Below are positions 22,005 through 36,577 of a DNA stretch of 64,000 nt, in pieces. The notes under the pieces were generated by a model. That model had not been told where the DNA came from, searched no databases, and saw only the letters and a program-made list of their open reading frames with translations. The position numbers and the translations under genes are program-made. The first letter of the stretch is position 1; every line of letters starts with the position of its first letter. The stretch spans positions 62,001 through 126,000 of the IMG/VR virus record IMGVR_UViG_3300034117_001294; one strand, given 5' to 3'.

Positions 22005-22007
22005 AGT

Positions 22008-22652: not shown

Positions 22653-22660
22653 ATATGTCC

Positions 22661-23470
22661 TTAAAAGTAAAAGCCGTTAGCACGGGGAAACCATGTGTCT
22701 CCATAGCCACCGTGTGGTGTTTTTGTCTGTTCGTAATCAGCACGTACTTCGCACCAATAAGTCTTGCCTAAACCGATTGCAACACTCAATGCGGCACTCT
22801 GGTTTCCAATAAACATTTCACTGCCTTGAATAAGTCTTGCAACTTCTAGCAGGTCTTCTGTTTTCTGATAGTGTATTTTTGTTTTGAATGTATCTTCAAA
22901 GCTAGCATGTTCGTCAGGTGTGCCAACAAACGCACCATATTCTCCGATCTGATTCTCAATGAACTTTTGCTCAATCCATCCGCCGCCGCCTTCTGCTCCG
23001 TGTAGATGCCTGTTAGTTCTGTTCACAATAATAGGCTTGCCTGGAATATGAATTGGTTGTACGGGAGTCAACCAAGGCTCGTGTAACAATTTCTTTTTAA
23101 TTTCTGGATCGTGAATGTTCCAACCCATAGCAAGTGCATAACATTCTGTTTGATTGCCTTGCCAACCGCGGATTAGGTGCTGTTTCCAATGATCTAGCAG
23201 TTGAGGAAAGTCGTCTACTTCGTCTTTCCATACTGCAACTTTGCCAATATAGTCTTGTGCTTCTAACAATGGTGCTACAATGTCGAAGTCTTTTTGTGTT
23301 AGTCTGCCACTTGCTGGGCCTGCGTTAGGCCACCCTAAAACTTTTTGTGCAAATTCATCGTGATAGTTTAATCTCACGTATAGGTCGCCTGGACCAATCA
23401 TTCGCATAACGCAGAGACTATAAACAATGTCTCCAAAAGTTGAGTGTGTGATATAGTTTGTATTTTTCAT
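22661..23470 (-). CDS. glycosyltransferase-like protein (GT9-like)
   Basis: FGDIV, LLEVARLI..SEMFIGNQS...A.GLG. Confidence 0.55.
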   Translation of the reverse strand: MKNTNYITHSTFGDIVYSLCVMRMIGPGDLYVRLNYHDEFAQKVLGWPNAGPASGRLTQKDFDIVAPLLEAQDYIGKVAVWKDEVDDFPQLLDHWKQHLIRGWQGNQTECYALAMGWNIHDPEIKKKLLHEPWLTPVQPIHIPGKPIIVNRTNRHLHGAEGGGGWIEQKFIENQIGEYGAFVGTPDEHASFEDTFKTKIHYQKTEDLLEVARLIQGSEMFIGNQSAALSVAIGLGKTYWCEVRADYEQTKTPHGGYGDTWFPRANGFYF

Positions 23471-23557
23471 AAGCTCTTAAAATTATAGCTGTATTTAATT
23501 ATAACTGCAACACCTAGAAAAATTTAAGGCATTGTTGCCAAAAAACAACACTGGATC

Positions 23558-23760
23558 TTGACAAGACTAAATAAACACTATACAATAGAGACTAGTTTGT
23601 AAGTTAGGTAGAGAAATTTTTAGCCACAGTTAAAATAGTGGTTGACAAGAGAACTAAATAACTGTACAATTAAGGCATAGTTAGTTAGAAAAGTTGTTAA
23701 AAAACTTTTTAGTCAAAAGATTAAAAAGAGGTTGACAACAACACTAAATAACTGTATAAT
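23558..23760 (+). promoter_or_regulatory. three tandem sigma70 promoters, each with CTAAATA in the spacer
   Basis: TTGACA-17-TACAAT at 23558 and 23642; TTGACA-17-TATAAT at 23732. Confidence 0.9.
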
Positions 23761-23819
23761 TAACACATAGGCAGCAATGGTGCTGTCAATGTAAAGAAAG
23801 TTTTTAAAGAGAAAACAAA

Positions 23820-23969
23820 ATGCAATCGAATTTTAGACATCAACAATTTAATACGATGCCCAAACAGGCAGGCTTTAACGCCTCCAATTGGTTATCTATT
23901 GAGTGTGGTAGTCTATCATATGATCGCACACCAGAGATTACAAGGGTCCGGGAGGGCTGGGATGGTTAA
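23820..23969 (+). CDS. putative attenuator leader peptide (49 aa, all 20 amino acids)
   Basis: MQSNFRHQQFNTMPKQAGFNASNWLSIECGSLSYDRTPEITRVREGWDG; lies between the promoters and the terminator. Confidence 0.6.
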   Translation: MQSNFRHQQFNTMPKQAGFNASNWLSIECGSLSYDRTPEITRVREGWDG

Positions 23970-24000
23970 GTAACAACTTAATTACATTTCAAAACTTCAA

Positions 24001-24036
24001 GGACCCTAGGATTAAAACCCTGGGGTTTTTTGTTTT
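24001..24036 (+). terminator. intrinsic terminator (candidate attenuator)
   Basis: GGACCCTAGG-loop-CCTGGGGTTT then T-tract; 5' arm complementary to AGGGTCC at 23943-23949. Confidence 0.8.
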
Positions 24037-24048
24037 CCGCAAGGAAGA

Positions 24049-24204
24049 ATGATAGAGAAAAAGATTAGAGAAGCAGAGTTTACTAGACAGCATACGCTTA
24101 GTCCAGAGCAACTTAAAAAATTGCTCGAAGGCAAAATGGCTCGTGCTAGACAGTATTACGAAGCAGTATCAAAGAAGCGAGAGGTAATCAAGGTTGCCGA
24201 TTGA
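24049..24204 (+). CDS. hypothetical 51-aa basic protein
   Basis: AAGGA SD, MIEKKIREAEF... Confidence 0.55.
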   Translation: MIEKKIREAEFTRQHTLSPEQLKKLLEGKMARARQYYEAVSKKREVIKVAD

Positions 24205-24315
24205 ATCGCAAAGTGTGAATATACAGGAAACGAGGTCCTGGCTCTGCACTATAAACACAGAGCAAACGGGCGGTGACGAGGATGGCTTACCCTTATGTGG
24301 GTAAAAAAATTCGTC

Positions 24316-24408
24316 ATATTAAAGCATATACTTGCCTGACTGCAAACGTCGTGGTAAACTACTAGAGAAAGGGGTTCGAATCCCCGGGACTGGTATGTGC
24401 TTTAATAT
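24316..24408 (+). ncRNA. 16-bp clamp enclosing a partial tRNA (CTGCAAA loop plus T arm)
   Basis: ATATTAAAGCATATAC/GTATGTGCTTTAATAT; GGGG-TTCGAAT-CCCC inside. Confidence 0.55.
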
Positions 24409-24472
24409 ACACTCTCCAGTCACTGACTCTGAATCAGCTGACAGGCGTAGCCGGAGAGTGTTAACAATTAAT

Positions 24473-24559
24473 GGAGCGTGTTCCCTGTTGCCGGCTGTAA
24501 CCCGGTAGTCACATTAAGCAGGGTGGCGACAAGAGGTTCGATTCCTTCACGCTCCACCA
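24473..24559 (+). tRNA. tRNA-Tyr(GTA)-like, no D arm, 8-bp acceptor
   Basis: GGAGCGTG/CACGCTCC-ACCA, CTGTAAC loop, TTCGATT. Confidence 0.65.
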
Positions 24560-24565
24560 ATAATT

Positions 24566-24640
24566 CCTCTTGTAGCTCAATGGCTAGAGCAATCGGCTGA
24601 TAACCGGTAGACATAAGTTCGATTCTTATCGAGAGGACCA
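24566..24640 (+). tRNA. tRNA-Ile(GAT)
   Basis: cloverleaf, CTGATAA loop, CCA. Confidence 0.9.
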
Positions 24641-24647
24641 AGTTTAT

Positions 24648-24722
24648 ACCGCAGTAGTCCTCTGGGAGGGCAACGGATTGTCTATCCGACTTAGGTGAGT
24701 TCGATCCTCACACACGGAGCCA
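24648..24722 (+). tRNA. tRNA-Asp(GTC), chimeric with mispaired acceptor
   Basis: TTGTCTA loop; 3' part identical to the Asn tRNA at 26253-26286. Confidence 0.6.
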
Positions 24723-24807
24723 TTATAGAAGCACATACAGATCCGCCCGAGTAGTAAGGGAGATAGCGACTAACCGTTGAAGGACTGTTTAAATGTGTTT
24801 CTATAAT

Positions 24808-24882
24808 GGGGGCAGCAGAGGGCTGCGGAGTTGCCTTGCAAGCATCTTGTCTAGAGGGGTTCGATACCCCCGGCCTCCACCA
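24808..24882 (+). tRNA. tRNA-Ala(TGC), atypical D arm
   Basis: G3:U70, CTTGCAA loop, CCA. Confidence 0.7.
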
Positions 24883-24889
24883 ATTTTAT

Positions 24890-24965
24890 CTCTCTAAAGC
24901 GTTATCAGGTTGCGTACACGGTTTGGGGCCGTGTGGTCCAGGTTCGAATCCTGGTAGGGAGACCA
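24890..24965 (+). tRNA. tRNA-Pro(TGG)
   Basis: cloverleaf, TTTGGGG loop, CCA. Confidence 0.88.
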
Positions 24966-24971
24966 ATTAAT

Positions 24972-25047
24972 GCACCTTTAGCTGATGTGGTCATAGCGGC
25001 GGTCTGAAGAACCGTTGAAGTTGGTTCGATTCCAACAGGGTGTACCA
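24972..25047 (+). tRNA. tRNA-Phe(GAA)
   Basis: CTGAAGA loop, CCA. Confidence 0.9.
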
Positions 25048-25052
25048 AATTT

Positions 25053-25127
25053 GCCCTTTTATCCTTAATGGTAGAGGTCCTGTTTTGTAATCAGGGTGTG
25101 TGGGTTCGATTCCTGCAAGGGGCACCA
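25053..25127 (+). tRNA. tRNA-Thr(TGT)
   Basis: TTTGTAA loop, CCA. Confidence 0.88.
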
Positions 25128-25137
25128 AGCAAATTAT

Positions 25138-25212
25138 ACTCCGGTCGTCTAGTGGCTAGGACGCCAGCCTTTCAAGTTGGAGAAGCGGGATCGAAACCCG
25201 TTCGGAGTACCA
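25138..25212 (+). tRNA. tRNA-Glu(TTC)
   Basis: CTTTCAA loop, CCA. Confidence 0.88.
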
Positions 25213-25219
25213 AGTTTAT

Positions 25220-25306
25220 GGAGATGTAGGAAAATTGGTAACCCCAGTGGACTGTAAATCCGCCGCCCGAAAGGCACTACTGGTTCGACTCCAGTCGTCT
25301 CCACCA
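25220..25306 (+). tRNA. tRNA-Tyr(GTA)
   Basis: CTGTAAA loop, long variable arm, CCA. Confidence 0.92.
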
Positions 25307-25311
25307 TTTTA

Positions 25312-25386
25312 GGTCTGTTCGTATAGAGGTTATTACTGCGGATTGTCTATCCGCTTACGGGGGTTCGATTCCCCCACAGACCGCCA
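25312..25386 (+). tRNA. tRNA-Asp(GTC)
   Basis: TTGTCTA loop, GCCA. Confidence 0.9.
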
Positions 25387-25389
25387 AGT

Positions 25390-25587
25390 TTTGTAAGTGT
25401 CAGCAAGAGAAAGACTCGCTAGGAAGATTCTTCGAAGGTCAACCTAGTGTTAAAGTAGGGCGGGTTCGAGTACCGTAAATGCAATGGTGCACCTATGTCA
25501 AGTATTCCAAGTGACTTACCTCCTCCCGTCCGGACTTGCATGAATCGGGTGAATGGTTGCGATTACAGAGGTGCAACTACTTACAAA
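25390..25587 (+). ncRNA. CAGCAA-clamp variant RNA
   Basis: TTTGTAAGT-GTCAGCAA ... ACTTACAAA, internal hairpins. Confidence 0.5.
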
Positions 25588-25597
25588 TTCATTTCAG

Positions 25598-25626
25598 TTG
25601 ACAACTACTGCAAAAGGTTGTATAAT
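25598..25626 (+). promoter_or_regulatory. sigma70 promoter
   Basis: TTGACA-17-TATAAT. Confidence 0.85.
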
Positions 25627-25740
25627 ACTAACTTAAACAAAAAGGAAAATTGACATGAAACGTTCAGGTAAACTGTAGTGTCATCCTAGACCCCCGTATG
25701 GTCCTGGATGGCACGTGAAAGACAATTCTTTACGATCCAT

Positions 25741-25816
25741 CCACAGCTGGCGTTAACGGTAGCGTACTCGGCTCTTAACCGATGAGGTGTCAGTTCGAAT
25801 CTGACGCTGTGGACCA
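25741..25816 (+). tRNA. tRNA-Lys(CTT)
   Basis: CTCTTAA loop, CCA. Confidence 0.88.
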
Positions 25817-25819
25817 TAT

Positions 25820-25894
25820 GGGGGTATAATTCAACGGCTAGAATAGCTGGCTTTTAACCAGTCTATCAGGGTTCGATTCCCTGTGCCCCTACCA
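25820..25894 (+). tRNA. tRNA-Lys(TTT)
   Basis: CTTTTAA loop, CCA. Confidence 0.9.
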
Positions 25895-25974
25895 TATGCA
25901 AACACATTACTGCACAGCATTTTGACTTCCAGGTCTTTTTGTATGTTGTGGTCGTCTGTAGTGTGTTTACATAT

Positions 25975-26050
25975 GGTGATGTAGCATAGTGGCTAATGCA
26001 GTTCCTTCATACGGAAAAGATCGTCGGTTCGAGTCCGACCATCACTACCA
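25975..26050 (+). tRNA. tRNA-Met/Ile2(CAT)
   Basis: TTCATAC loop, 1-72 paired, CCA. Confidence 0.85.
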
Positions 26051-26056
26051 ATTTAT

Positions 26057-26131
26057 GGAGCTATCGTCTATCGGTTAGGACATCTGGTTTTCATCCAGGC
26101 AAGCGGGGTTCGATTCCCCGTAGCTCTTCCA
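26057..26131 (+). tRNA. tRNA-Glu(TTC)
   Basis: TTTTCAT loop, CCA. Confidence 0.88.
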
Positions 26132-26135
26132 AGTT

Positions 26136-26195
26136 TAGGATCGGTTCAGCAAACAAAAAGCTAACTTTTGGTGTCTAGCGACAAAAACGATCCTG
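26136..26195 (+). ncRNA. CAGCAA-clamp RNA 1 (TTG anticodon-like loop)
   Basis: TAGGATCG-GTTCAGCAA...CGATCCTG; inner hairpin loop TTTTGGT. Confidence 0.7.
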
Positions 26196-26205
26196 TTATT
26201 TCTAT

Positions 26206-26284
26206 TCCGTGAAATCCAAGCATGGTGCAAGGACTTGACTGTTAATCAATGATTAGGTGAGTTCGATCCTCACACACGGAGCCA
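26206..26284 (+). tRNA. tRNA-Asn(GTT)
   Basis: CTGTTAA loop, GCCA. Confidence 0.85.
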
Positions 26285-26809
26285 TTCATTAATATCCCAA
26301 CGCTGATTAATCCTAAACAAGATTACAACCCGCGGAAGGATATTACAATTTTGAAAAGCATGTGGAACTTGTGTATTAACAATTGCAGGCTCATTTGTTT
26401 CCACTTTTCCAACAAACTCACAGTCACTGTGGTTGTATAGCATGTAGGTAACATTGCCTTGCCCTGTACCTTGTATTCTCGGCTCTGTAGTTGAAGAATA
26501 AAAATTTAGAAAAGTATTATCAAATCCAAGGATAGGAATGTTTAGACTATAAACAAACCCTCCTGTATCTTTGTGAATAGGATATGTTCCTTTAAGACTT
26601 ACGTTAATAACTGCATAATGAAGATATTGATATAGTCCGTATGTTTGAAGTTGTTCTTTGAGTTCTGGAATATCAGTAAACTCCGAAGCTTTAACATATT
26701 GAAATAAAGGCTCATTAAGTTTTGTATGTTTGAGAACAACATCAACCATTTTATTTCTAATGGTGTCAATGTTTTCAAACTTGATTGATCTATAAAGTGC
26801 CGGATCCAT
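26270..26809 (-). CDS. 2OG-Fe(II)/cupin-like oxygenase
   Basis: IHKD...SLNIP...PHAFQN...R. Confidence 0.65.
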   Translation of the reverse strand: MDPALYRSIKFENIDTIRNKMVDVVLKHTKLNEPLFQYVKASEFTDIPELKEQLQTYGLYQYLHYAVINVSLKGTYPIHKDTGGFVYSLNIPILGFDNTFLNFYSSTTEPRIQGTGQGNVTYMLYNHSDCEFVGKVETNEPAIVNTQVPHAFQNCNILPRVVILFRINQRWDINEWLRV

Positions 26810-26833
26810 TCCGATATTTATAGCAAGTATTAT

Positions 26834-26909
26834 ACCGTCGTAGTAATCTGGGTATTACACCTCCCTGTCTAGGAGATCAAGGCGAGTTCGATTCTCGTCG
26901 GCGGTGCCA
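26834..26909 (+). tRNA. tRNA-Asp(GTC)
   Basis: CTGTCTA loop, GCCA. Confidence 0.85.
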
Positions 26910-26913
26910 ATTT

Positions 26914-26976
26914 TAGGATGCGTTCAGCAAACTTTATACATTCAACTTTTAATTGAAAACGTAAAAAAGCATCCTG
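26914..26976 (+). ncRNA. CAGCAA-clamp RNA 2 (Lys TTT anticodon stem-loop)
   Basis: TAGGATGC-GTTCAGCAA...GCATCCTG; TTCAA-CTTTTAA-TTGAA. Confidence 0.75.
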
Positions 26977-26987
26977 TTTTATTTTGT

Positions 26988-27061
26988 TGGTCTATGGTGT
27001 AATGGTAACACAACAGACTTTGACTCTGTCGTTCCAGGTTCGAGCCCTGGTAGGCCTGCCA
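26988..27061 (+). tRNA. tRNA-Gln(TTG)
   Basis: CTTTGAC loop, GCCA. Confidence 0.9.
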
Positions 27062-27070
27062 ACAATTCAT

Positions 27071-27147
27071 ACCCGCGTAACTCAGTGGACTAGAGTACTA
27101 CGCTACGAACGTAGGAGTCGGAGGTTCGAATCCTTCCGTGGGTGCCA
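27071..27147 (+). tRNA. tRNA-Arg(ACG)
   Basis: CTACGAA loop, GCCA. Confidence 0.9.
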
Positions 27148-27715
27148 AGTACTTGGTTAGCATATTGATAGATCGTTGCATAGAGGGTCTATATACACAT
27201 CCATCTTTTAAAGATGATAATACTAGACTGATACAATATCTATCTTCGATAGGATTAATGATATTATGAGGTACTCCGACTTGCACAACTGAAGGAAATC
27301 CTATAGGGGCTGAAAACAACAAATCAACTTCAGTTCGATTATATCCTATGTAATGTGAGTTAACCGCAGATAAACTTTGCTCAGTGCGAACAATATTATC
27401 TTTTGGTTTGTACCAATTCATAATGCTGTTAGCACCTCCAAATATCCAATTTATTTTAGTAAAGTCTCCATGTTTAACATCAACATGTATACCGCTAAAA
27501 AAATTAGGAGTAGAGTAGAACACTTCGCAATGATCTGGAAAAATATCTAAATCTGCTAGCAAGTCTAGCATGTCCGAGTTAATATGTTCCTTGATACTAA
27601 TTGAAGAATGATAGGATTTTTTGCCATTAACTATGTTAGGAAGACTTGTTAAACTATGTTTGTTTTTTAACAAGTCAACATTAAAATTTAAGTTATGATG
27701 ATACGTTGTCATCAT
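27098..27715 (-). CDS. 2OG-Fe(II)/cupin-like oxygenase
   Basis: IHVD...KINW...WY...PHNIIN...RYCIS; 3' end runs antisense into tRNA-Arg. Confidence 0.65.
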   Translation of the reverse strand: MMTTYHHNLNFNVDLLKNKHSLTSLPNIVNGKKSYHSSISIKEHINSDMLDLLADLDIFPDHCEVFYSTPNFFSGIHVDVKHGDFTKINWIFGGANSIMNWYKPKDNIVRTEQSLSAVNSHYIGYNRTEVDLLFSAPIGFPSVVQVGVPHNIINPIEDRYCISLVLSSLKDGCVYRPSMQRSINMLTKYLAPTEGFEPPTPTFVA

Positions 27716-27740
27716 TTATTTACCGAAAGACTTATTAGGT

Positions 27741-27811
27741 GTGGCTATGTTGTAATGGTAGCAACCTAGACTGTGACTCTGGTAGTACGGGTTCGAGTCC
27801 CGTTAGTCACC
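27741..27811 (+). tRNA. tRNA-His(GTG), no encoded G-1 or CCA
   Basis: CTGTGAC loop, C73; flanked by a 10-bp inverted repeat. Confidence 0.85.
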
Positions 27812-27850
27812 CCTAATAAGTTTTTGCCACATTGTGGCACCAATAAATAC

Positions 27851-27942
27851 GGAAAGTAATGCAGGGGAGTTGGTTCCCCGACCAGCCTTGAAAACTGGGT
27901 TCTCAGAAATGGGATGGGGTTCGACTCCTCTGCTTTCCACCA
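27851..27942 (+). tRNA. tRNA-Ser(TGA), 8/4-type fold with long D stem
   Basis: GGAAAGTA/TGCTTTCC, CTTGAAA loop, 4-bp T stem. Confidence 0.7.
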
Positions 27943-27947
27943 ATAAT

Positions 27948-28460
27948 ATGAACGAAGATTATTTTATCCCTGTTAACACTGACATTAATTTTTTACCTAA
28001 AGTAAAAGAATTTATTCCGAATGCAATTTGGAAATGGGTTCCGTCTATGTTTATTGCTACAAATTTATCTAGTACGCACATCGGTGATGATCAATTACTG
28101 AGTAAAATTCATAAGGAATTTTTAGGAGAGTTAAATCTTTATAAAATTCCATGTAAATCTGTCTATGGATGGCACCAGGATAAAAATTCAATAGGGTGTT
28201 CATTAAATATGGCATTAGATCGATATCATTGTCATACATTGTTTTCAGTTGGGAATCACGGAACTCCTTTCTTACAAAAAGTAATTGAACTTGAGTACGA
28301 TCCTAATACATGGTATGCATTTAATTCAAAACAGGTGCATACTGTAATAAATCTAGACGAAAAAGATAGATATCTACTTTCATATGTACTACCGGGAATT
28401 TTTTCCTACACAGATCTAAAATCTTGGTTAGTACAGCATACATATACTTCTCTGATGTAA
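27948..28460 (+). CDS. 2OG-Fe(II)/cupin-like oxygenase
   Basis: WHQD...SLN...VHTVIN...RYLLS; start moved to ATG 27948 after the tRNA. Confidence 0.65.
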   Translation: MNEDYFIPVNTDINFLPKVKEFIPNAIWKWVPSMFIATNLSSTHIGDDQLLSKIHKEFLGELNLYKIPCKSVYGWHQDKNSIGCSLNMALDRYHCHTLFSVGNHGTPFLQKVIELEYDPNTWYAFNSKQVHTVINLDEKDRYLLSYVLPGIFSYTDLKSWLVQHTYTSLM

Positions 28461-28519
28461 TGGCAGCATAGCGGTCTCCAAAACCGTTCGTTGGGGTTCG
28501 AGTCCCTAGGGGAGTGCCA
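28446..28519 (+). tRNA. tRNA-Trp(CCA)
   Basis: CTCCAAA loop, GCCA. Confidence 0.88.
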
Positions 28520-28524
28520 GTTTA

Positions 28525-28639
28525 AGGATACATACAGCAATGTCTAACGACACGTTGGTTCGATTCCAACATTATCCGCTTTGGATGATTCGCTCAATGG
28601 TAGAGCAATGGGCTTCATGCCCATCGAAACTGTATCCTG
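28525..28639 (+). ncRNA. CAGCAA-clamp RNA 3 containing a circularly permuted tRNA (TCA anticodon)
   Basis: order T arm, closed acceptor, D arm, anticodon arm inside AGGATACA/TGTATCCT. Confidence 0.75.
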
Positions 28640-28648
28640 TTTTATTAT

Positions 28649-28726
28649 GTAGGGGTTCCAGAGAGGCTTAATGGCACTGATTGCAAACCAGTTGATTCGT
28701 GGGTTCAAATCCCACTCCCTACTCCA
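28649..28726 (+). tRNA. tRNA-Cys(GCA)
   Basis: TTGCAAA loop, U73 CCA. Confidence 0.88.
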
Positions 28727-28731
28727 TTTAT

Positions 28732-28805
28732 GCGTGGTTAGTTTAATGGTAGAACCAGACGTTGCCAACGTTTAAGCAGGAGTTCGATTCTCCTACCCCG
28801 CACCA
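28732..28805 (+). tRNA. tRNA-Gly(GCC)
   Basis: TTGCCAA loop, CCA. Confidence 0.88.
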
Positions 28806-28825
28806 AGTTAGTTGTAAATATTGTT

Positions 28826-29395
28826 ATGTATTTTGTTAAATTAAAAGAACAATTTTTTCTAACACTAGATGCAAATATTGCAAAAGAAGAATTTGCAAAT
28901 TTTGGATCTGTAATCGGCAATGAATTTAAAGGTATACAATATAATAGAATACCGCAGTATTGTACTGATACTATGTTAGAAGTCGTTCCGGAAAATTATA
29001 GAAAACATTTTACATCGGGCATTATGAAAATTAATGTACCGTATGCAAGACCACACACTGATAGCGGAGTAACCGCAGTATTAAATTTTTATGTACAGAC
29101 TGCTGATGCTGTGACAGTATTTTATAATCAGCTTACTGAAGATTCGGTTTTAACAAAGATAAAAAATCAAACTAACGGAAGTGTCTTTAAATTAAAAGAT
29201 CTAGTTCCTGCTGCAAATTTTAAAGCATTGCCGGGAGACGTTTGGTTACTGGATGTAACGAAGCCGCATTCTGTTATTGCTGCATCCGCAGTTGATAGAG
29301 TAGCATTCTGTTTACACACTAACAGTTTATCTTTCGAAGAAGTCAAAAAAATATTTGAATGCCCGGGTGGTGGAATGGTAGACACACTTTACTGA
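28826..29395 (+). CDS. 2OG-Fe(II)/cupin-like oxygenase
   Basis: PHTD...LNFY...PHSV...R; 3' end runs into a tRNA. Confidence 0.65.
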   Translation: MYFVKLKEQFFLTLDANIAKEEFANFGSVIGNEFKGIQYNRIPQYCTDTMLEVVPENYRKHFTSGIMKINVPYARPHTDSGVTAVLNFYVQTADAVTVFYNQLTEDSVLTKIKNQTNGSVFKLKDLVPAANFKALPGDVWLLDVTKPHSVIAASAVDRVAFCLHTNSLSFEEVKKIFECPGGGMVDTLY

Positions 29396-29446
29396 GGTAA
29401 GGAAAAACACTAGGATGTGAGAGTTCGAATCTCTCCTCGGGAACCA
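29361..29446 (+). tRNA. tRNA-Leu(GAG), degenerate anticodon arm
   Basis: Leu-type D arm, CTGAGG loop, T arm, CCA. Confidence 0.6.
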
Positions 29447-29451
29447 TGTAT

Positions 29452-29528
29452 GCCTTCGTACGCTAATTGGGAGTGCGGCTTGCCTTAGAAGCAGGTGGTT
29501 GGGGGTTCGAATCCGCCCGAAGGTACCA
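29452..29528 (+). tRNA. tRNA with TAG (Leu) anticodon, short variable loop
   Basis: CTTAGAA loop, CCA. Confidence 0.75.
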
Positions 29529-29666
29529 TTTTTGTTATCCCGTTTGATCCCAAAGTGTTCGCATAATGGGTAGGGTATCGAGCAGTGCGGCGATATAGTT
29601 GCCATTGCGTCGTGAGGTTGTGGAACAATAAACTGATAAAATCCACAATATAACAAATCTGTTTAT

Positions 29667-29743
29667 GCCCCGTTACGCTAATTGGTAGTGCGGATTCTCT
29701 CAAAAGGAGTTGGCTGTCTGTTCGAATCAGACACGGGGTACCA
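29667..29743 (+). tRNA. tRNA with CAA (Leu) anticodon, short variable loop
   Basis: CTCAAAA loop, CCA; D arm near-identical to the tRNA at 29452. Confidence 0.75.
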
Positions 29744-29748
29744 ATTAC

Positions 29749-29823
29749 AGTTCCTTATTTCAGAGGTAGAATATCACATTGACATTGTGAAGGTCACTGG
29801 TTCGATCCCAGTAGGAACTACCA
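29749..29823 (+). tRNA. tRNA-Val(GAC)
   Basis: TTGACAT loop, CCA. Confidence 0.88.
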
Positions 29824-29824
29824 A

Positions 29825-30400
29825 TTATATAATTAAAGGTTTGAAAAGCTCAACTATTTCTTCCCAAGTAGAAAATTTTGCAGTTGCCCGAATGCTTAGA
29901 CACCAGCGAATATTTGCAATGTCCCGATTAGCAACATTATGAGGTATATTAGTTCTAACTAAACAAGGCCCTTCAATTCTAGCAGATTCAATGCAGACAA
30001 CATCGGCTCGATCAAAATGAATATATGGTGTGCCGCCGCTTGACATTTTAATATTATTTTGTTTACCGGGCAACGGGGAATACCAAAACATTTCTGAATT
30101 AGCAGACCCCCATACTATATTGATACCCCATACACAATGAGTAACTCCGTTAATAGTATCAATATGAATGTCTAGATTGCTGTTAGCATTACCTCTAAAA
30201 AAAATACATTCTGAAAGAATATCTATTCCGAAATTTTTAAAAAATTCAATAGACTCATCTGTAAGAAATTCTTTATGGTCAACTAACTTCATAGCCCAAT
30301 TGTGCTCTGATTTAGAATAAACCAAATCAATATAATGTTGCATGTCTATATTATCTTTTAATATTTTGACAGGAATATTTAATTTGTAATGGTTTTGCAT
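29825..30400 (-). CDS. 2OG-Fe(II)/cupin-like oxygenase
   Basis: IHID...GIN...WY...PHNVAN...RWCLS. Confidence 0.65.
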   Translation of the reverse strand: MQNHYKLNIPVKILKDNIDMQHYIDLVYSKSEHNWAMKLVDHKEFLTDESIEFFKNFGIDILSECIFFRGNANSNLDIHIDTINGVTHCVWGINIVWGSANSEMFWYSPLPGKQNNIKMSSGGTPYIHFDRADVVCIESARIEGPCLVRTNIPHNVANRDIANIRWCLSIRATAKFSTWEEIVELFKPLII

Positions 30401-30412
30401 TACGTATTTATT

Positions 30413-30487
30413 GCCCTAGTAGCTCAGTGGTAGAGCACCGTCTTGATAAGGCGGGTGTCCGTGGATCGTTCCCACGCTAGGGTACCA
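30413..30487 (+). tRNA. tRNA-Ile(GAT), unusual T loop
   Basis: TTGATAA loop; T loop ATCGTTC. Confidence 0.8.
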
Positions 30488-30506
30488 AAAAAAAAATAAA
30501 AAAGAC

Positions 30507-30575
30507 TTGACAGAGTCTTAAATAGACTGTATAATAAACACATACGCTAGCAACTGTTAGCACTGTTCTTTAAAA
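30507..30575 (+). promoter_or_regulatory. sigma70 promoter followed by boxB-like hairpin and boxA
   Basis: TTGACA-17-TATAAT; GCTAGC-AACT-GTTAGC; TGTTCTTTAAAA at 30564. Confidence 0.75.
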
Positions 30576-30591
30576 AGTTAAGTTGGTATTT

Positions 30592-30675
30592 GCCCCGGTG
30601 GTGTAATGGTAGCCACGCTGGTCTTAGAAGCCAGTGGAGAAATCCGTGTCGGTTCGAGTCCGACCTGGGGCACCA
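30592..30675 (+). tRNA. tRNA-Leu(TAG)
   Basis: CTTAGAA loop, long variable arm. Confidence 0.92.
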
Positions 30676-30790
30676 TATACAAACATACTATAGGTTGGGT
30701 TAGATTCGCGGTCTAACTATTTGGGTCTGTAGTGTAGCCCTCCAAAACTACACGCGACTAAGATACATAGTGTGTTTCTATATGGTGAAT

Positions 30791-30874
30791 GCGAGAGTGG
30801 AGAAATGGTATACTCAGGAGACTTAAAATCTCCCGTCGAAAGGCATGCGGGTTCGAGTCCCGCCTCTCGTACCA
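30791..30874 (+). tRNA. tRNA-Leu(TAA)
   Basis: CTTAAAA loop, long variable arm. Confidence 0.92.
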
Positions 30875-30883
30875 AACAATTAC

Positions 30884-30958
30884 CTGGCGTTCGTTCAATG
30901 GATAGGACAGCATTCTTCTAAAGTGCGAATAGAGGTTCGATTCCTCTACGCCGGACCA
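30884..30958 (+). tRNA. tRNA-Arg(TCT)
   Basis: CTTCTAA loop, CCA. Confidence 0.9.
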
Positions 30959-30979
30959 AGTTTTTTATTAAGGATCAAA

Positions 30980-31213
30980 ATGAGAGCAAGAACATCTGCA
31001 ACTTTTAAGTTGAGTAAGCGAACAAAAACAATGTTAGCATTGATGAAGTTTAAAAATAATCAAGACCGTCATGGTTTTAAAAATGCAATGATTGATGCAC
31101 AAGTGGCAGCAAGCATTGTTCCAAAATCAGAAAAGCGTGATCGTAACGCACCTCGCCCACAAGGCACTAGTTACGTGACCAATGACACTGGTACTGCAAG
31201 TACTAGCGTTTGA
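30980..31213 (+). CDS. hypothetical basic protein
   Basis: AAGGA SD; start at ATG 30980. Confidence 0.6.
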   Translation: MRARTSATFKLSKRTKTMLALMKFKNNQDRHGFKNAMIDAQVAASIVPKSEKRDRNAPRPQGTSYVTNDTGTASTSV

Positions 31214-31224
31214 GTAAAAAATAT

Positions 31225-31300
31225 TCCGCAGTAGCTCAGTCGGTAGAGTAGAAGACTGTTAATCTTTTGGTCCGTGGTTCGAGCCCACGCTGTGGAGCCA
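31225..31300 (+). tRNA. tRNA-Asn(GTT)
   Basis: CTGTTAA loop, GCCA. Confidence 0.92.
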
Positions 31301-31308
31301 AGTTAAAT

Positions 31309-31398
31309 GGTGCGGTCCTATAATGGTATTAGAGCGGATTGCTAATCCGTCGATCGGTGAAAGCCGGTTTCTGAGTTCGAGTCTCAGTCGCACCGCCA
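31309..31398 (+). tRNA. tRNA-Ser(GCT)
   Basis: TTGCTAA loop, long variable arm, GCCA. Confidence 0.9.
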
Positions 31399-31405
31399 AG
31401 TTTTT

Positions 31406-31469
31406 TAGGATCAGTTCAGCAAACATAATAAAAATTTCATTTATACTGAAACATAAAAAGTTGATCCTG
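31406..31469 (+). ncRNA. CAGCAA-clamp RNA 4 (TAT anticodon stem-loop)
   Basis: TAGGATCA-GTTCAGCAA...TGATCCTG; TTTCA-TTTATAC-TGAAA. Confidence 0.72.
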
Positions 31470-31478
31470 TTATTTTAT

Positions 31479-31570
31479 GCCCCTGTAGTTTAATGGTAGA
31501 ACAGCGGATTTATATCCCGTATGCAACAGATAATTGGTTAGTGTGGGTTCGACTCCCGCCGGGGGTACCA
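31479..31570 (+). tRNA. tRNA-Ile(TAT) with long variable region
   Basis: TTTATAT loop, CCA. Confidence 0.75.
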
Positions 31571-31728
31571 AGTTTTGAGATAGACGATGAGATGAGTCCC
31601 TTGTATTCTAGTGCCCTATTCTTGAGCATGACACACCAGTAGAATTGTACAAGGTCTGCATAAACTCTCTCATTCGAGACAACCCAGCGAGTCCTTAAGA
31701 AAGATAGTTGGTCTCTCAAAAACCTATT

Positions 31729-31789
31729 TAGGTTAATTACAGCAATAAAAAATGGCTGTCTGCTAGGACTTTAAACTAGTATTAACCTG
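31729..31789 (+). ncRNA. CAGCAA-clamp RNA 5
   Basis: TAGGTTAA-TTACAGCAA...TTAACCTG. Confidence 0.7.
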
Positions 31790-32081
31790 TTGAAAACCCG
31801 GTTTACTGTTTTACGTTATTAAAACAGCGTCCCTGAAACGATAGAACAGGGGGTACACTAGGACCTGACCTTACAGTCTTCTGTTCGGAGATACTGAAAA
31901 CTGCCTAGGGGCGGGAACAAAACCCGTCCAGATGGAAAAATTAGTGGACAGAGTAACCGCTCAGTTTGGGGCTCATGTGGTGTGAGTGGCTAGACACTTT
32001 ATTGAAATGCATTAGGTATCGTATCAAGTAGTGTAACTACTTTGCCAGCGGTGTTAGTGTGTTTCAATAAATAGATTTAAT

Positions 32082-32155
32082 GCGGGGTTAGTTTAGTGGT
32101 AAAACGAGATCCTTCCAAGTTCAAGTCGCGAGTTCGATTCTCGCACCCCGCTCCA
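32082..32155 (+). tRNA. tRNA-Gly(TCC)
   Basis: CTTCCAA loop, U73 CCA. Confidence 0.9.
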
Positions 32156-32163
32156 AGTTTTTT

Positions 32164-32239
32164 GCGTCCTTAACTCAGTTGGTAGAGTTCTGCCTTTACA
32201 CGGCAGCTGTCGGCGGTTCGAGCCCGTCAGGACGTACCA
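32164..32239 (+). tRNA. tRNA-Val(TAC)
   Basis: TTTACAC loop, CCA. Confidence 0.92.
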
Positions 32240-32246
32240 AGATAAT

Positions 32247-32323
32247 CGGTGTGTAGCTCAGCTTGGTAGAGCTCTGCGTTTGGGACGCAGTGGTCGCATG
32301 TTCGAATCGTGTCACACCGACCA
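32247..32323 (+). tRNA. tRNA-Pro(TGG)
   Basis: TTTGGGA loop, CCA. Confidence 0.92.
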
Positions 32324-32488
32324 ATAAACTCTCCCTTACATACGGAGTACAATGAGATAAGTAGTATGTAAACGAATTTAGACCGGACCTGTATCCATAC
32401 TCCGGTTCCGCTGAAGCGAAAACAGGATGGGCTGCTCTCACGGGGTTTGATGGTTTCCCGACACAACAATAATCATCAACAAGAATTA

Positions 32489-32562
32489 CGCGGGTAGGGT
32501 GGTCACCACACCGGTCTCATAAGCCAGGTGCATCGGAGGTTCGAATCCTTCACCCGCATCCA
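32489..32562 (+). tRNA. initiator-like tRNA-Met(CAT) with reduced D arm
   Basis: C1:A72 mismatch, CTCATAA loop, CCA. Confidence 0.7.
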
Positions 32563-32567
32563 TATTT

Positions 32568-32642
32568 GGGCTGATAGTGATAATGGGAGCACAGTGGCTT
32601 TGCAAGCCTCGGGTGGGAGTTCGATCCTCCCTCGGTCCACCA
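32568..32642 (+). tRNA. tRNA-Ala(TGC)
   Basis: G3:U70, TTTGCAA loop. Confidence 0.88.
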
Positions 32643-32657
32643 ACAAAGGAATGTTAT

Positions 32658-32795
32658 ATGAGTACAAAAGATACACTTGATAAAGCATATGGCAATATTC
32701 CCAAAGAGCCGGTATCATTTATACAATTTGATTTACCGACATTTAGAGGAATTAAGTATTACTGGCTGCGGCTAGTAAGACTTTTTACTCGTTAA
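32658..32795 (+). CDS. hypothetical 45-aa protein
   Basis: AAGGA SD, ATG 32658. Confidence 0.5.
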   Translation: MSTKDTLDKAYGNIPKEPVSFIQFDLPTFRGIKYYWLRLVRLFTR

Positions 32796-32806
32796 GTTTT
32801 GACCTT

Positions 32807-32924
32807 TAGGTTCTTTTCAGCAATTAAAAATAATCTTTCTGTAAAAAAGAGGGGCTGGGTTCGAATCCCGGGCGTGAGTTGGTCTTCACGTTGGTGTAGT
32901 GGTAGCACGTAAAAAGAGAACCTG
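32807..32924 (+). ncRNA. CAGCAA-clamp RNA 6 containing a circularly permuted tRNA (GTA anticodon)
   Basis: order anticodon arm, T arm, closed acceptor, D arm inside AGGTTCT/AGAACCT. Confidence 0.75.
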
Positions 32925-32955
32925 TTTAACTTTAACTTTAACTTCAAGGAAACAC

Positions 32956-33183
32956 ATGGCACGTTTAACGTCACAAGCAGCGGTAGAGATGGTAGGTAAT
33001 CGTTTTGATCTAGTATTGATTGCATCAATTCGTGCTAGAGAATTAAAGCGTGGGCATATGCCTATGGTTACCTGTAATAACGGATTCAACGTCACTGCAC
33101 TTCGAGAAATTGAAGCAGGTAAAGTGGGACGTGATTATTTGGAAAAGCTTCGCAAGCCTCCTAAAAAGAGTGAACACTATTAA
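32956..33183 (+). CDS. rpoZ: RNA polymerase omega subunit
   Basis: MARLT...VGNRFDLVLIAS.RAREL...ALREIEAG; SD before ATG 32956. Confidence 0.85.
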   Translation: MARLTSQAAVEMVGNRFDLVLIASIRARELKRGHMPMVTCNNGFNVTALREIEAGKVGRDYLEKLRKPPKKSEHY

Positions 33184-33188
33184 AGATC

Positions 33189-33647
33189 ATGCAGCCAATC
33201 TATCTTAATAAAGAAGTCGATAAGACCGGCGTTGAGCTAGAAATTTTACACGTTGAACAAATAGCCAATAGTCCAGTCTATACATTTTTTATCAGACACA
33301 TGGCCGAATTGATAGATTCCGGGTTCGCAATGGCACGAACTAGTTGGAATGACAATGATTGTGGAGCCATTTATGCAGAAGAGAATGGTGTTATAGTAGG
33401 GGCCATAATCTACAGTAGAGCATACCTACACAAAAATTGCCTGTGGATCGAACTTAGTGCAGTACGTAGTGATTGCCGGAAACGCGGCATTTATTCAGTG
33501 TTACATAATTATTTTGAAATGCTTGCAAAAAAAATGAACTGCGATTCTATTTCTAGTAAAGTACATAAAAACAATGTAATTCGATTATCTTCAGCAGAAA
33601 AAGTTGGCATGAATATTGCTTTCTACCAAATGGTTAAAATGATCTAA
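33189..33647 (+). CDS. GNAT acetyltransferase
   Basis: V..D.RKRGI motif A; KVH..N. Confidence 0.7.
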   Translation: MQPIYLNKEVDKTGVELEILHVEQIANSPVYTFFIRHMAELIDSGFAMARTSWNDNDCGAIYAEENGVIVGAIIYSRAYLHKNCLWIELSAVRSDCRKRGIYSVLHNYFEMLAKKMNCDSISSKVHKNNVIRLSSAEKVGMNIAFYQMVKMI

Positions 33648-33688
33648 TAAATATTAAACAATATGCGTGAATACTTGCATTAATTAAT

Positions 33689-34438: not shown

Positions 34439-34440
34439 AA

Positions 34441-34905
34441 ATGGCAAAATGTTATCAATTGGTCGGAGTGCCTGCCTCGGGCAAGAGCACTTGGATTAAA
34501 GAACAAGATTGGGCTTCTGACTGCGTAGTAGTGAGTACTGACGATTTTGTTGAAGCCTATGCTGTAGAACAAGGCAAGACCTACTCGGAAGTATTTGTAG
34601 AGTACATGCCGACGGCTGTAAATCTAATGGCTGACAAAGTTGTACAAGCACGTGAAGCTGGCAAGGACATTATATGGGATCAAACCAGTACTACTCTAGT
34701 AAGCCGTATTCGTAAGTTTAATATGTTGCCTGACTACGAGCATATTGCTGTGGTGTTTAAGACACCGGAACATAAAGAACTGTTTAGACGGTTATGGAGT
34801 CGCCCAGGCAAAGACATTCCAGAGCATGTTATCGCCAGCATGATTGCCAGTTGGGAAGAGCCTACTGTAGAGGAAGGCTTTAAGGAAGTTTGGTTCGCCC
34901 AATAA
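34441..34905 (+). CDS. P-loop kinase (AAA_33, polynucleotide-kinase-like)
   Basis: GVPASGKSTW, STDD, WDQT, EPT.EEGF. Confidence 0.8.
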   Translation: MAKCYQLVGVPASGKSTWIKEQDWASDCVVVSTDDFVEAYAVEQGKTYSEVFVEYMPTAVNLMADKVVQAREAGKDIIWDQTSTTLVSRIRKFNMLPDYEHIAVVFKTPEHKELFRRLWSRPGKDIPEHVIASMIASWEEPTVEEGFKEVWFAQ

Positions 34906-34910
34906 TTACT

Positions 34911-34946: not shown

Positions 34947-34974
34947 ATGTACTTACTACACTTAAGGAAACATC

Positions 34975-36576: not shown

Positions 36577-36577
36577 T

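What the first reader, a model, noticed from the sequence alone, without database searches (positions are those of the whole stretch)
24316..32071. Second repeated clamp family (AAACACAY...RTGTGTTT), some carrying tRNA-like fragments
Seen: five 16-21 bp long-range stems share a core: 24316-24408, 24721-24808, 25892-25976, 30671-30787 and 31998-32071, with a shorter relative at 24409-24461. Differences are mostly G:U-compatible, implying RNA-level structure. Inserts include a Cys-type CTGCAAA loop plus T arm, a Gln-type CTGA-CTCTGAA-TCAG stem-loop and a Trp-type CTCCAAA loop. Three stems overlap the CCA end of the preceding tRNA. Inference: RNase III-like processing sites or a second protein-binding scaffold for anticodon decoys.
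Basis: partly seen in the sequence, partly recalled or inferred. Interest (0 to 1): 0.65.

Follow-up and report, generated by a model that had tools for sequence, protein, structure and literature searches.

The report
Clamped spacer RNAs in phage tRNA arrays
Between the tRNA genes of a lake-water jumbo phage lie small hairpin RNAs that share one ~20-base-pair closing stem but carry different inserts; the same design recurs in dozens of uncultured phages and in no RNA catalogue searched, and its function is unknown.

Summary
All five long stems exist at the stated coordinates. They fold far better than shuffled sequence and share one helix, with core 5'-AAACACAUU / AGUGUGUUU-3'.

The window comes from a 229-kb IMG/VR phage record from lake water. 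A covariance model built on the helix finds 93 distinct copies in 58 viral loci, almost all inside tRNA arrays and on the tRNA strand. Compensatory changes run along the whole helix. Core columns hold 23 G.U pairs against 1 A.C, and a U.G wobble is kept in about 80% of copies.

Where a tRNA lies just upstream, its CCA end forms the first helix pairs in 35 of 38 cases. A sixth copy in this genome fills the excised intervening segment of a permuted tmRNA gene.

Inserts fall into about 68 classes. Only 16 of 98 carry a T-loop. The "anticodon-type" loops are not conserved in orthologues, so the decoy idea fails its own test.

The window's Ro60-like gene tracks the other clamp family (YrlA-like), not this one: complete phages with this clamp have no Ro60-like gene.

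Best reading: a modular spacer-RNA cassette released by tRNA end-processing, its helix read by a host factor, possibly RNase III. Function is unproven. Probably a new RNA family.

The parts
24316..24408 (+). Clamp copy c1. Arms 24316-24331 / 24393-24408. The insert is a cloverleaf-like fold with a T arm (GGGGUUCGAAUCCCC). It is the first element of the array and has no tRNA upstream.
   Evidence: 41.6 bits; z = -4.36. Orthologues L051:2635-2741 and L043:7794-7900 show covarying T stem and first hairpin.
24720..24809 (+). Clamp copy c2. Arms 24720-24736 / 24793-24809. It starts on the CCA of an uncalled tRNA-like gene ending ...GGAGCCA. The insert has no tRNA features.
   Evidence: 41.3 bits; z = -6.85. 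Insert is conserved in L072 and L038, with a compensatory change in the AGCG/CGYU hairpin. A metatranscriptome contig covers 24719-24884 with 1 mismatch.
25890..25978 (+). Clamp copy c3. Arms 25890-25910 / 25958-25978. It fills the gap between tRNA-Lys(UUU) 25820-25894 and tRNA-Met(CAU) 25975-26050 exactly. CCA pairs with U-1, G+1 and G+2 of the next tRNA.
   Evidence: 59.7 bits; z = -4.97. The Lys(UUU)-clamp-Met arrangement recurs in other phages.
30671..30787 (+). Clamp copy c4. Arms 30671-30691 / 30767-30787. It lies between tRNA-Leu(UAG) 30592-30675 and tRNA-Leu(UAA) 30791-30874. The insert is 75 nt with two hairpins.
   Evidence: 56.3 bits; z = -4.74. Orthologue L015:5170-5290 keeps the first hairpin but replaces the 'CUCCAAA' hairpin.
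31998..32071 (+). Clamp copy c5. Arms 31998-32015 / 32054-32071, with four G.U pairs. It sits at the end of a ~430-nt conserved non-coding block, 10 nt before tRNA-Gly(UCC) at 32082.
   Evidence: 38.2 bits; z = -5.60; the - strand folds at only -12.2 against -25.8 kcal/mol.
24409..24461 (+). Separate hairpin with a 9-bp stem (ACACUCUCC/GGAGAGUGU) and an inner CUGA-CUCUGAA-UCAG stem-loop. It is not a member of the family by the model.
   Evidence: z = -3.09. No R1 match at E <= 10. Absent at the corresponding place in the two orthologous arrays examined, L051 and L043.
25820..25894 (+). tRNA-Lys(UUU), whose 3' CCA forms the first pairs of c3. This is the commonest upstream neighbour of the family.
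   Evidence: It precedes 14 of 35 distinct tRNA/insert combinations, against 4% of background tRNAs.
25975..26050 (+). tRNA-Met(CAU), whose first two G pair with the CC of the upstream CCA in the precursor. Its RNase P site would define the 3' end of c3.

Best explanation
These are members of a conserved, modular family of spacer RNAs built into phage tRNA arrays. Each unit is co-transcribed with the tRNAs.

Its 5' arm begins on or directly after the CCA of the upstream tRNA. Its 3' arm ends at or a few bases before the next tRNA. A ~20-bp helix therefore brings the two processing sites together and closes a variable insert of 25-96 nt.

Proposed mechanism (inferred): 3'-end maturation of the upstream tRNA and RNase P cleavage of the downstream tRNA release a blunt hairpin. 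A host double-strand-specific cut inside the helix may contribute. The paired ends of the hairpin resist exonucleases.

The conserved core is AAACACAUU/AGUGUGUUU, with a preferred U.G wobble and a frequent mismatch just outside it. It would be the element read by a host factor. The insert would be the functional, exchangeable part.

Shown: the family, its structure, its strand, its register with CCA, its modularity, its use as a tmRNA intervening segment, and its independence from the phage Ro60-like gene.

Inferred: excision, stability, the identity of the factor, and any function of the inserts.
For: - Structure. On 56 sequences, 90.2% of cells are paired against 79.8% in shuffles (0 of 500 reach it) and 30-53% when the partner is slid. 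13 of 20 pairs change on both sides.
- Covariation in the core. Copies found by the model but not by the search pattern show compensatory core variants such as AAGUACACU/AGUGUACUU and AAAUACACU/AGUGUAUUU.
- Strand. Core columns hold 23 G.U against 1 A.C. The U.G wobble is present in 75 of 93 copies. 83 of 86 copies are co-oriented with tRNAs. All five window copies are more stable on the + strand.
- Register. The upstream tRNA's CCA coincides with helix columns 5-7 in 35 of the 38 cases with a tRNA within 30 nt.
- tmRNA context. A sixth copy fills the segment between ...CCACCA and GGGCCUGA... of a permuted tmRNA (Rfam tmRNA_permuted, 101 bits), which is a segment removed in maturation.
- Modularity. 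There are about 68 insert classes. 14 different inserts follow tRNA-Lys(UUU). The same insert occurs both in the tmRNA junction and between tRNA-Lys and tRNA-His.
- RNA libraries. Metatranscriptome contigs cover the tRNA and ncRNA bins but none of the four pure-ORF bins. One contig covers c2 with 1 mismatch.
Against: - No read ends or cleavage data exist. The RNA libraries are contigs only and could contain DNA.
- The downstream junction is loose: 12 exact, the others 1-20 nt away.
- 55 of 93 copies have no ARAGORN tRNA within 30 nt upstream, although uncalled tRNA-like genes and other clamps often sit there.
- No factor reading the core was identified. RNase III, TROVE, RtcB and RNA ligase families are absent from this 65%-complete record.
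- No insert shows more than chance-level complementarity (at most 13 nt) to this phage record.
- Part of the core's sequence conservation was imposed by the search pattern.
Confidence: 0.5

Rival explanations
1. A pure processing signal. The helix is simply a host RNase III (or similar dsRNA nuclease) site that separates neighbouring tRNAs, like the leader-trailer stems of rRNA operons. The inserts would be functionless filler or tRNA debris.
For: - The helix is held at about 20 bp, roughly two turns.
- It joins the CCA end to the next 5' end.
- It occupies the excised tmRNA segment.
- tRNA-His sits in a comparable 22-bp leader-trailer stem, conserved in L003.
- Some inserts contain tRNA fragments.
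Against: - Most tRNAs in the same arrays are separated by 3-10 nt with no hairpin, so the helix is not needed for separation.
- Inserts are conserved between distant phages, with compensatory changes in c1 and c2 orthologues. One 68-nt insert looks identical in three contexts on reading.
- A sequence-conserved core with a preferred wobble is more than RNase III is known to need (my own knowledge).
- No phage RNase III was found.
Confidence: 0.2
2. The clamp is a scaffold for a dedicated RNA-binding protein, for example the phage Ro60-like protein as for Y RNAs. It would present anticodon-like or tRNA-like decoys against tRNA-targeting defences.
For: - The window encodes a Ro60-fold protein at 40974-42431: the top 11 PDB fold matches are all Ro60, and feature neighbours are TROVE.
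- 16 of 98 inserts have T-loops, and some look like permuted tRNA pieces.
- Clamps lie preferentially after tRNA-Lys(UUU), Glu(UUC) and Gln(UUG): 24 of 35 against 12% background. From my own knowledge, tRNA-Lys(UUU) is a known bacterial anticodon-nuclease target, and Glu and Gln share its wobble-uridine modification.
Against: - Complete clamp-bearing phages G001, G003 and G004 have no DUF2828 or TROVE gene, with positive controls working.
- The Ro60-like gene tracks the other family, AGGAU..CAGCAA..AUCCUG.
- Read directly, the arm sequences contain no GNCGAA/CGAA Ro-binding motif, and there is no Rfam YrlA hit on these copies.
- The anticodon-like loops are not conserved and lack U33.
- A small basic ORF in the array is not shared consistently.
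Confidence: 0.08
3. A DNA-level element. The inverted repeats would be the ends of a miniature mobile element, or recombination flanks that shuffle cassettes between phages. That would be analogous to promoter-stem-loop cassettes in T4-type phages, with no RNA function.
For: - The same insert occurs in different junctions.
- 14 different inserts occur at the same site after tRNA-Lys.
- Copy number is 1-8 per phage.
Against: - Pairing is maintained by G.U, not by DNA-symmetric matches: 23:1 in the core.
- Orientation is fixed relative to transcription in 83 of 86 copies.
- Compensatory substitutions occur in both arms.
- No transposase or endonuclease lies inside; inserts are only 25-96 nt.
- Exchange by recombination is compatible with, and probably additional to, an RNA role.
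Confidence: 0.1
4. Chance inverted repeats or decayed tRNA pseudogenes peculiar to this genome.
For: AU-rich phage DNA gives many weak hairpins: 72 stems of at least 16 pairs (G.U allowed) in the 229-kb record.
Against: - z-scores are -4.4 to -6.9.
- There are 93 distinct copies in 58 independent viral loci.
- Neither ARAGORN nor the Rfam tRNA model calls them.
Confidence: 0.02

Closest known systems
Phage T4 species 1 and species 2 RNAs (rnaC, rnaD)
   Same: - They are small stable RNAs encoded inside a phage tRNA cluster and abut a tRNA directly. rnaD starts 1 nt after tRNA-Arg and rnaC 6 nt further on.
- rnaC contains a T arm and has paired ends.
- Their function is still unknown (PMC9697503).
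   Different: - No match to model R1; the best hit in the T4 tRNA region is 9.9 bits at another place.
- They have no shared 20-bp closing helix and no modular set of inserts.
- T4 has two such RNAs, not a family repeated across junctions.
YrlA-type bacterial and phage Y RNAs (Rfam RF02553), partners of Ro60/Rsr
   Same: - A terminal helix formed by the 5' and 3' ends closes a variable, often tRNA-like module.
- They are found in phages with tRNA arrays (PMC4201824; PMC12135203).
   Different: - No Rfam YrlA hit on the five copies.
- No GNCGAA motif in the arms.
- The family occurs in complete phages with no Ro60-like gene.
- The window's YrlA-like RNA belongs to the other clamp family: 28525-28641, 25.9 bits, full-length but below threshold.
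Intervening segment of permuted (two-piece) tmRNA genes (Rfam RF04321, RF01849)
   Same: One copy in this genome is exactly that segment, between ...CCACCA and the 5' GGG of the coding piece. Both are excised at a CCA end and an RNase P-type 5' end.
   Different: The consensus intervening segment is about 25 nt, AU-rich and unstructured in the model. Here it is a ~95-nt structured unit that also occurs between ordinary tRNAs.
Leader-trailer helices of rRNA operons (RNase III sites)
   Same: A long helix formed by sequences flanking a unit to be excised, about two helical turns long. The extended 22-bp stem around tRNA-His in this array fits this model even better.
   Different: Here the helix encloses the spacer, not the mature product. 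The core is sequence-conserved. Cleavage is untested.

Membership tests
Y RNA / YrlA (Rfam RF02553) | Match to the curated covariance model | tested here: not met
   cmscan of 22000-42000 at E <= 1 gives no YrlA hit on c1-c5. The only hit, 28525-28641, belongs to the other clamp family.
Y RNA / YrlA (Rfam RF02553) | Encoded with a Ro60 (TROVE) orthologue | tested here: not met
   Complete clamp-bearing phages G001, G003 and G004 have neither TROVE nor DUF2828/DUF7788, and positive controls rang.
Y RNA / YrlA (Rfam RF02553) | GNCGAA-type Ro-binding motif in the 5' strand of the terminal helix (PMC4201824) | tested here: not met
   The 5' arm consensus is ACCAUAUAAAAACACAUUA, with no CGAA.
Y RNA / YrlA (Rfam RF02553) | tRNA-like T and D arms in the module | tested here: inconclusive
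   A T-loop motif occurs in 16 of 98 inserts, and D-arm-like pieces in a few such as L009:9272-9384. Most inserts have none.
RNase III substrate | Double helix of about two turns (about 20 bp or more) | tested here: met
   20 pairs are modelled and 90% of cells are paired. Window copies have 16-21 bp.
RNase III substrate | Staggered cleavage by RNase III | not testable with these tools
   Only contigs of RNA libraries were available, so no read ends. No phage RNase III gene was found.
T4 rnaC/rnaD-type stable RNAs | Sequence or structure homology to T4 species 1 or 2 RNA | tested here: not met
   R1 over T4 68000-75000 with filters off gives nothing on rnaC or rnaD; best score is 9.9 bits elsewhere.
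T4 rnaC/rnaD-type stable RNAs | Small RNA gene abutting a tRNA within the phage tRNA cluster | tested here: met
   CCA is in exact register in 35 of 38 cases here. T4 rnaD lies 1 nt after tRNA-Arg.
tRNA gene or pseudogene | Cloverleaf recognised by ARAGORN or the Rfam tRNA model | tested here: not met
   None of c1-c5 is called.
Miniature inverted-repeat mobile element | DNA-symmetric terminal inverted repeats | tested here: not met
   Arm mismatches are strand-asymmetric: 23 G.U against 1 A.C in core columns, and U.G at one column in 75 of 93 copies.
Permuted tmRNA intervening segment | Lies between the acceptor-piece CCA and the coding-piece 5' end of a permuted tmRNA | tested here: met
   This holds for the sixth copy only, G000:C1:30905-31018, which is outside the window. 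Rfam tmRNA_permuted scores 101.1 bits against a cut-off of 47.

The most novel reading that the evidence does not exclude
The clamp is a natural, standardised RNA 'display scaffold'. A host or unrecognised phage factor reads the conserved wobble-containing helix. The roughly 68 exchangeable inserts, some of them tRNA mimics, are effectors that tune or protect translation during infection, for example by titrating tRNA-targeting defence nucleases or tRNA-modifying enzymes. That would explain why the units sit preferentially after tRNA-Lys(UUU), Glu(UUC) and Gln(UUG), and why inserts at that site turn over between phages.
Probability: 0.15. Interest if true: 0.85.

Novelty: new variant of a known kind. 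Interest (0 to 1): 0.62.

Why it matters
Phage tRNA arrays are usually read as lists of tRNAs. This finding shows that in one large group of lake-water phages the 'spacers' are themselves a conserved, modular RNA family with a fixed architecture and many different inserts.

If the units are released as stable RNAs, they add dozens of unexplored phage small RNAs. They would also offer a natural design for expressing structured RNAs between tRNAs.

The strict coupling to the CCA end, and the use of one unit as the excised part of a permuted tmRNA, give a concrete handle on how polycistronic tRNA and tmRNA precursors are matured in these hosts.

The T4 species 1 and 2 RNAs have been without a function for fifty years. 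A larger family in the same genomic niche offers comparative data that T4 alone cannot give.

Tried and rejected
- **Isolate phages.** Megablast of 24000-32700 against 50,697 isolate phage records gave no match. Sensitive blastn with c3 and with a consensus-like copy (L070) gave only chance or T-arm hits. No cultured phage with the element was found.
- **Rfam 15** at E <= 1 gave nothing on the copies.
- **Cellular genomes.** Only a 1.5-kb contig binned to a 'Planktophila' MAG holds true copies, and it is probably phage DNA. Absence from hosts is therefore not shown.
- **Ro60-like protein as partner**: rejected as an obligate partner.
- **Small basic ORF 30980-31210 as partner**: not shared consistently.
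- **Phage RNase III, RtcB, Rnl-type ligases, TROVE**: none in this record. A circularisation idea therefore has no support here. The T4 Rnl1 family search had no working control, and the record is only 65% complete.
- **Antisense targets.** Insert complementarity to the phage record is at most 13 nt, which is chance level.
- **T4 rnaC/rnaD**: not members.
- **Literature.** Searches found no description of the element.
- **Complex prediction** was not used, because no protein partner is claimed.

Full report
**Context**

The window is bases 62001-126000 of a 228,849-bp IMG/VR virus record. The record is linear, and CheckV estimates it 65% complete. It occurs in many lake-water metagenomes. It carries 38 ARAGORN tRNAs in the window, 34 of them in one array at 24.5-32.7 kb, all on the + strand. 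There are also several tRNA-like genes that ARAGORN does not call. No isolate phage is close at the DNA level.

**The observation**

- Each folds far better than shuffled sequence: z = -4.4 to -6.9, with 0 of 200 shuffles as stable. Each is more stable on the + strand than on the complement; c5, for example, gives -25.8 against -12.2 kcal/mol.
- The arms share a core, 5' AAACAYAY and 3' (U)AGUGUGUUU(C).
- c2, c3 and c4 start on the CCA of the preceding tRNA. In c3 that CCA pairs with U-1, G+1 and G+2 of the next tRNA.
- The hairpin at 24409-24461 is real, but the family model does not match it.

**It is a widespread family**

An ORF inside the array led to a distant phage contig, L003, at 36% protein identity. 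A simple hairpin scan of L003 found three stems with the same core. It also found the same extended stem around tRNA-His.

About half of them lie in tRNA arrays and extend into the typical form ACCAUAUAAAAACACAUUA ... UAGUGUGUUUCUAUAUGGU.

I aligned 56 copies (A1) and counted pairs for a 20-bp helix:

| Measure | Result |
|---|---|
| Cells paired | 90.2% |
| Same, 500 shuffles | 79.8% (0 of 500 reach the real value) |
| Same, 3' partner slid | 30-53% |
| Pairs changed on both sides | 13 of 20 |

Model R1, built on this alignment, finds 93 distinct copies in 58 viral loci. These include 33 copies that do not fit the seeding pattern. Their cores carry compensatory variants such as AAGUACACU/AGUGUACUU, AAAUACACU/AGUGUAUUU and GAACACAUU/AGUGUGUUC. 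The core is therefore a helix with a preferred sequence, not merely an artefact of the pattern.

Further properties of the family:

- **Strand.** 83 of 86 copies lie on the strand of the tRNAs.
- **RNA-level pairing.** Core columns hold 23 G.U pairs against 1 A.C. One column is U.G in 75 copies, C:G in 15 and U:A in 3. The position just outside the core is unpaired in about half the copies, mostly as A.C.
- **Copy number.** Five whole records checked hold 1-6 copies; fragmentary arrays show up to 8 (L051). That includes complete phages of 162, 172 and 364 kb.
- **Catalogues.** Rfam 15 has no match, and blastn finds nothing in 50,697 isolate phage records.
- **Cellular genomes.** Among the first 80 pattern hits in cellular genomes, only a 1.5-kb MAG contig holds true copies.

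**Coupling to tRNA ends**

- Where ARAGORN calls a tRNA within 30 nt upstream, the tRNA's CCA is exactly helix columns 5-7 in 35 of 38 cases.
- The downstream tRNA starts exactly at the end of the helix in 12 cases and 1-20 nt later in the others.
- The upstream tRNA is Lys(UUU) in 14, Glu(UUC) in 6 and Gln(UUG) in 4 of 35 distinct tRNA/insert combinations. Together these three make up 12% of tRNAs in the same loci. Shared ancestry has not been corrected for.
- Outside the window, at G000:C1:30905-31018, a sixth copy lies between ...CAGGUCCACCA and GGGCCUGACACAGGAUCGA.... Rfam calls the surrounding gene a permuted tmRNA (tmRNA_permuted 101.1 bits, cut-off 47; alpha_tmRNA 70.9 bits). The tag reading frame encodes ANDSQFALAA.
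- The clamp unit there is precisely the segment removed when the two tmRNA pieces mature.
- The same 68-nt insert also occurs in the tmRNA gene of L088 and between tRNA-Lys and tRNA-His in L038.

**The inserts**

- Inserts are 25-96 nt long and fall into about 68 classes by shared 8-mers. 16 of 98 carry a T-loop motif.
- Orthologous inserts are conserved between phages. The T stem and first hairpin of c1 covary in L051 and L043, and a hairpin of c2 covaries in L038.
The c1 loop is UGCAAAC, CGUAAAA and CGCAAAA in the three orthologues, with G or C where U33 should be. The c4 'CUCCAAA' hairpin is replaced by another hairpin in L015.
- No insert has more than chance-level complementarity to the phage record.

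**Protein partners**

- ORF 40974-42431 carries DUF2828 and DUF7788. A fold model (mean pLDDT 72) has Ro60 structures as all of its top 11 PDB matches. Language-model neighbours are TROVE families. The window therefore encodes a Ro60-like protein.
- That gene goes with the other clamp family, AGGAU..CAGCAA..AUCCUG. One member of that family is a full-length but sub-threshold YrlA match.
- Complete phages G001, G003 and G004 have R1 copies but no DUF2828 gene, no TROVE gene and none of the short first-family RNAs the pattern can detect. The controls behaved as expected.
- A small basic ORF in the array is not shared consistently.
- No clamp phage checked encodes RNase III.
- Any factor that reads the helix is therefore most likely from the host.

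**Expression**

Four freshwater metatranscriptomes hold contigs over the tRNA and ncRNA bins of 24250-30249, but none over the four bins that are pure ORF. One contig covers c2 plus the next tRNA-like gene with one mismatch. This is compatible with transcription but gives no ends, and DNA carry-over cannot be excluded.

**Interpretation**

The best-supported reading is a modular spacer-RNA cassette. A conserved helix ties the end of one tRNA to the start of the next and encloses an exchangeable insert, so the tRNA end-processing enzymes release it as a clamped hairpin.

- The preferred wobble and fixed length argue that something reads the helix. Host RNase III is the simplest candidate but is untested.
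- A pure processing role is weakened because most neighbouring tRNAs do without the helix and because the inserts are conserved.
- A DNA-only mobile element is contradicted by the strand-asymmetric pairing, although exchange of units by recombination clearly happens.
- The decoy/Ro-scaffold reading fails its own test.

**Comparison with known systems**

- T4 rnaC and rnaD occupy the same niche, abutting tRNA-Arg, and rnaC has a T arm. They do not match the model, and their function is likewise unknown (PMC9697503).
- YrlA Y RNAs share the end-helix-plus-module design, but three of their four defining features are not met.

I therefore class this as a new variant of a known kind: small structured RNAs embedded in phage tRNA clusters. 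It is probably a new RNA family.

Noticed in passing
window 26137-26200, 26914-26980, 28523-28645, 31407-31475: The 'first clamp family' (AGGAU..UNCAGCAA...AUCCUGUU). 28525-28641 is a full-length but sub-threshold Rfam YrlA match (25.9 bits) containing a circularly permuted tRNA-Met-like module. The family is present in 8 of the 9 loci that carry the Ro60-like gene. It is absent from clamp-2 phages that lack the gene. These are likely Y RNA-like partners of the Ro60-like protein.
   Followed up: partly
window 40974-42431 (+): The DUF2828+DUF7788 protein has a predicted Ro60 fold. Its top 11 PDB matches are Ro60 from phage phiLo, human, Deinococcus and Xenopus. About 8,000 relatives exist in metagenomes, and homologues occur in 711 isolate phage records.
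   Followed up: yes
outside the window: G000:C1:30853-31155 (locus L245:454-755): A permuted two-piece tmRNA gene that ARAGORN missed. It has a sigma70-like promoter upstream and the tag ANDSQFALAA. A clamp unit forms its intervening segment.
   Followed up: yes
window 27726-27825: tRNA-His (27741-27813) sits inside a 22-bp stem formed by its leader and trailer. The same arrangement is conserved in L003:2900-2995. Position -1 is U, not the G that pairs with C73 in bacterial tRNA-His.
   Followed up: partly
window 24472-24556 and 27851-27938: Two tRNA-like genes are matched only by the Rfam tRNA-Sec model, below threshold (30.7 and 35.6 bits). They may be tRNAs with unusual acceptor/T-stem lengths, as described in PMC5389517.
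   Followed up: no
window 24641-24722, 24810-24885, 26200-26277, 29361-29446: Further tRNA-like genes are uncalled or called with a two-base anticodon. 24641-24722 and 26200-26277 share an identical 3' half (...GGUGAGUUCGAUCCUCACACACGGAGCCA).
   Followed up: no
window 26270-26809 (-), 27098-27715 (-), 29825-30400 (-): Paralogous ORFs of 180-205 aa sit on the opposite strand inside the tRNA array: 28% identity between 27098-27715 and 29825-30400; 26270-26809 is grouped with them by position and size only. They have no Pfam match, and relatives occur in other phage arrays. An H-x-D...H pattern is visible by eye only.
   Followed up: partly
window 32899-39254: Gene cluster downstream of the array:
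- Rpb6/omega-like, 32899-33183.
- GNAT and a methyltransferase.
- AAA_33 kinase, 34441-34905.
- Metallophosphoesterase, 35145-35699, found in 12 clamp-bearing loci.
- HD domain protein, dual-specificity phosphatase and QueC-like protein.

This looks like an RNA end-healing and modification set, but no ligase was found.
   Followed up: partly
window 25387-25740, 29529-29666, 31571-31997, 32324-32488: Other non-coding blocks of the array are conserved in many of the same phage loci (70-95% identity). None matches Rfam. 25387-25740 contains a TTGACA-17-TATAAT promoter-like site near 25599-25628.
   Followed up: partly
family-wide (loci L002-L124): Clamp units follow tRNA-Lys(UUU), Glu(UUC) and Gln(UUG) far more often than expected: 24 of 35 against 12%. 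14 different inserts occur after tRNA-Lys(UUU). The figures are not corrected for shared ancestry.
   Followed up: partly
window 11478-13532, 43464-57649: The phage encodes a CHASE2-adenylate/guanylate cyclase protein and a cluster of four radical-SAM proteins, two of them with B12-binding domains. It also encodes an ATP-grasp enzyme and a DegT-type aminotransferase.
   Followed up: no
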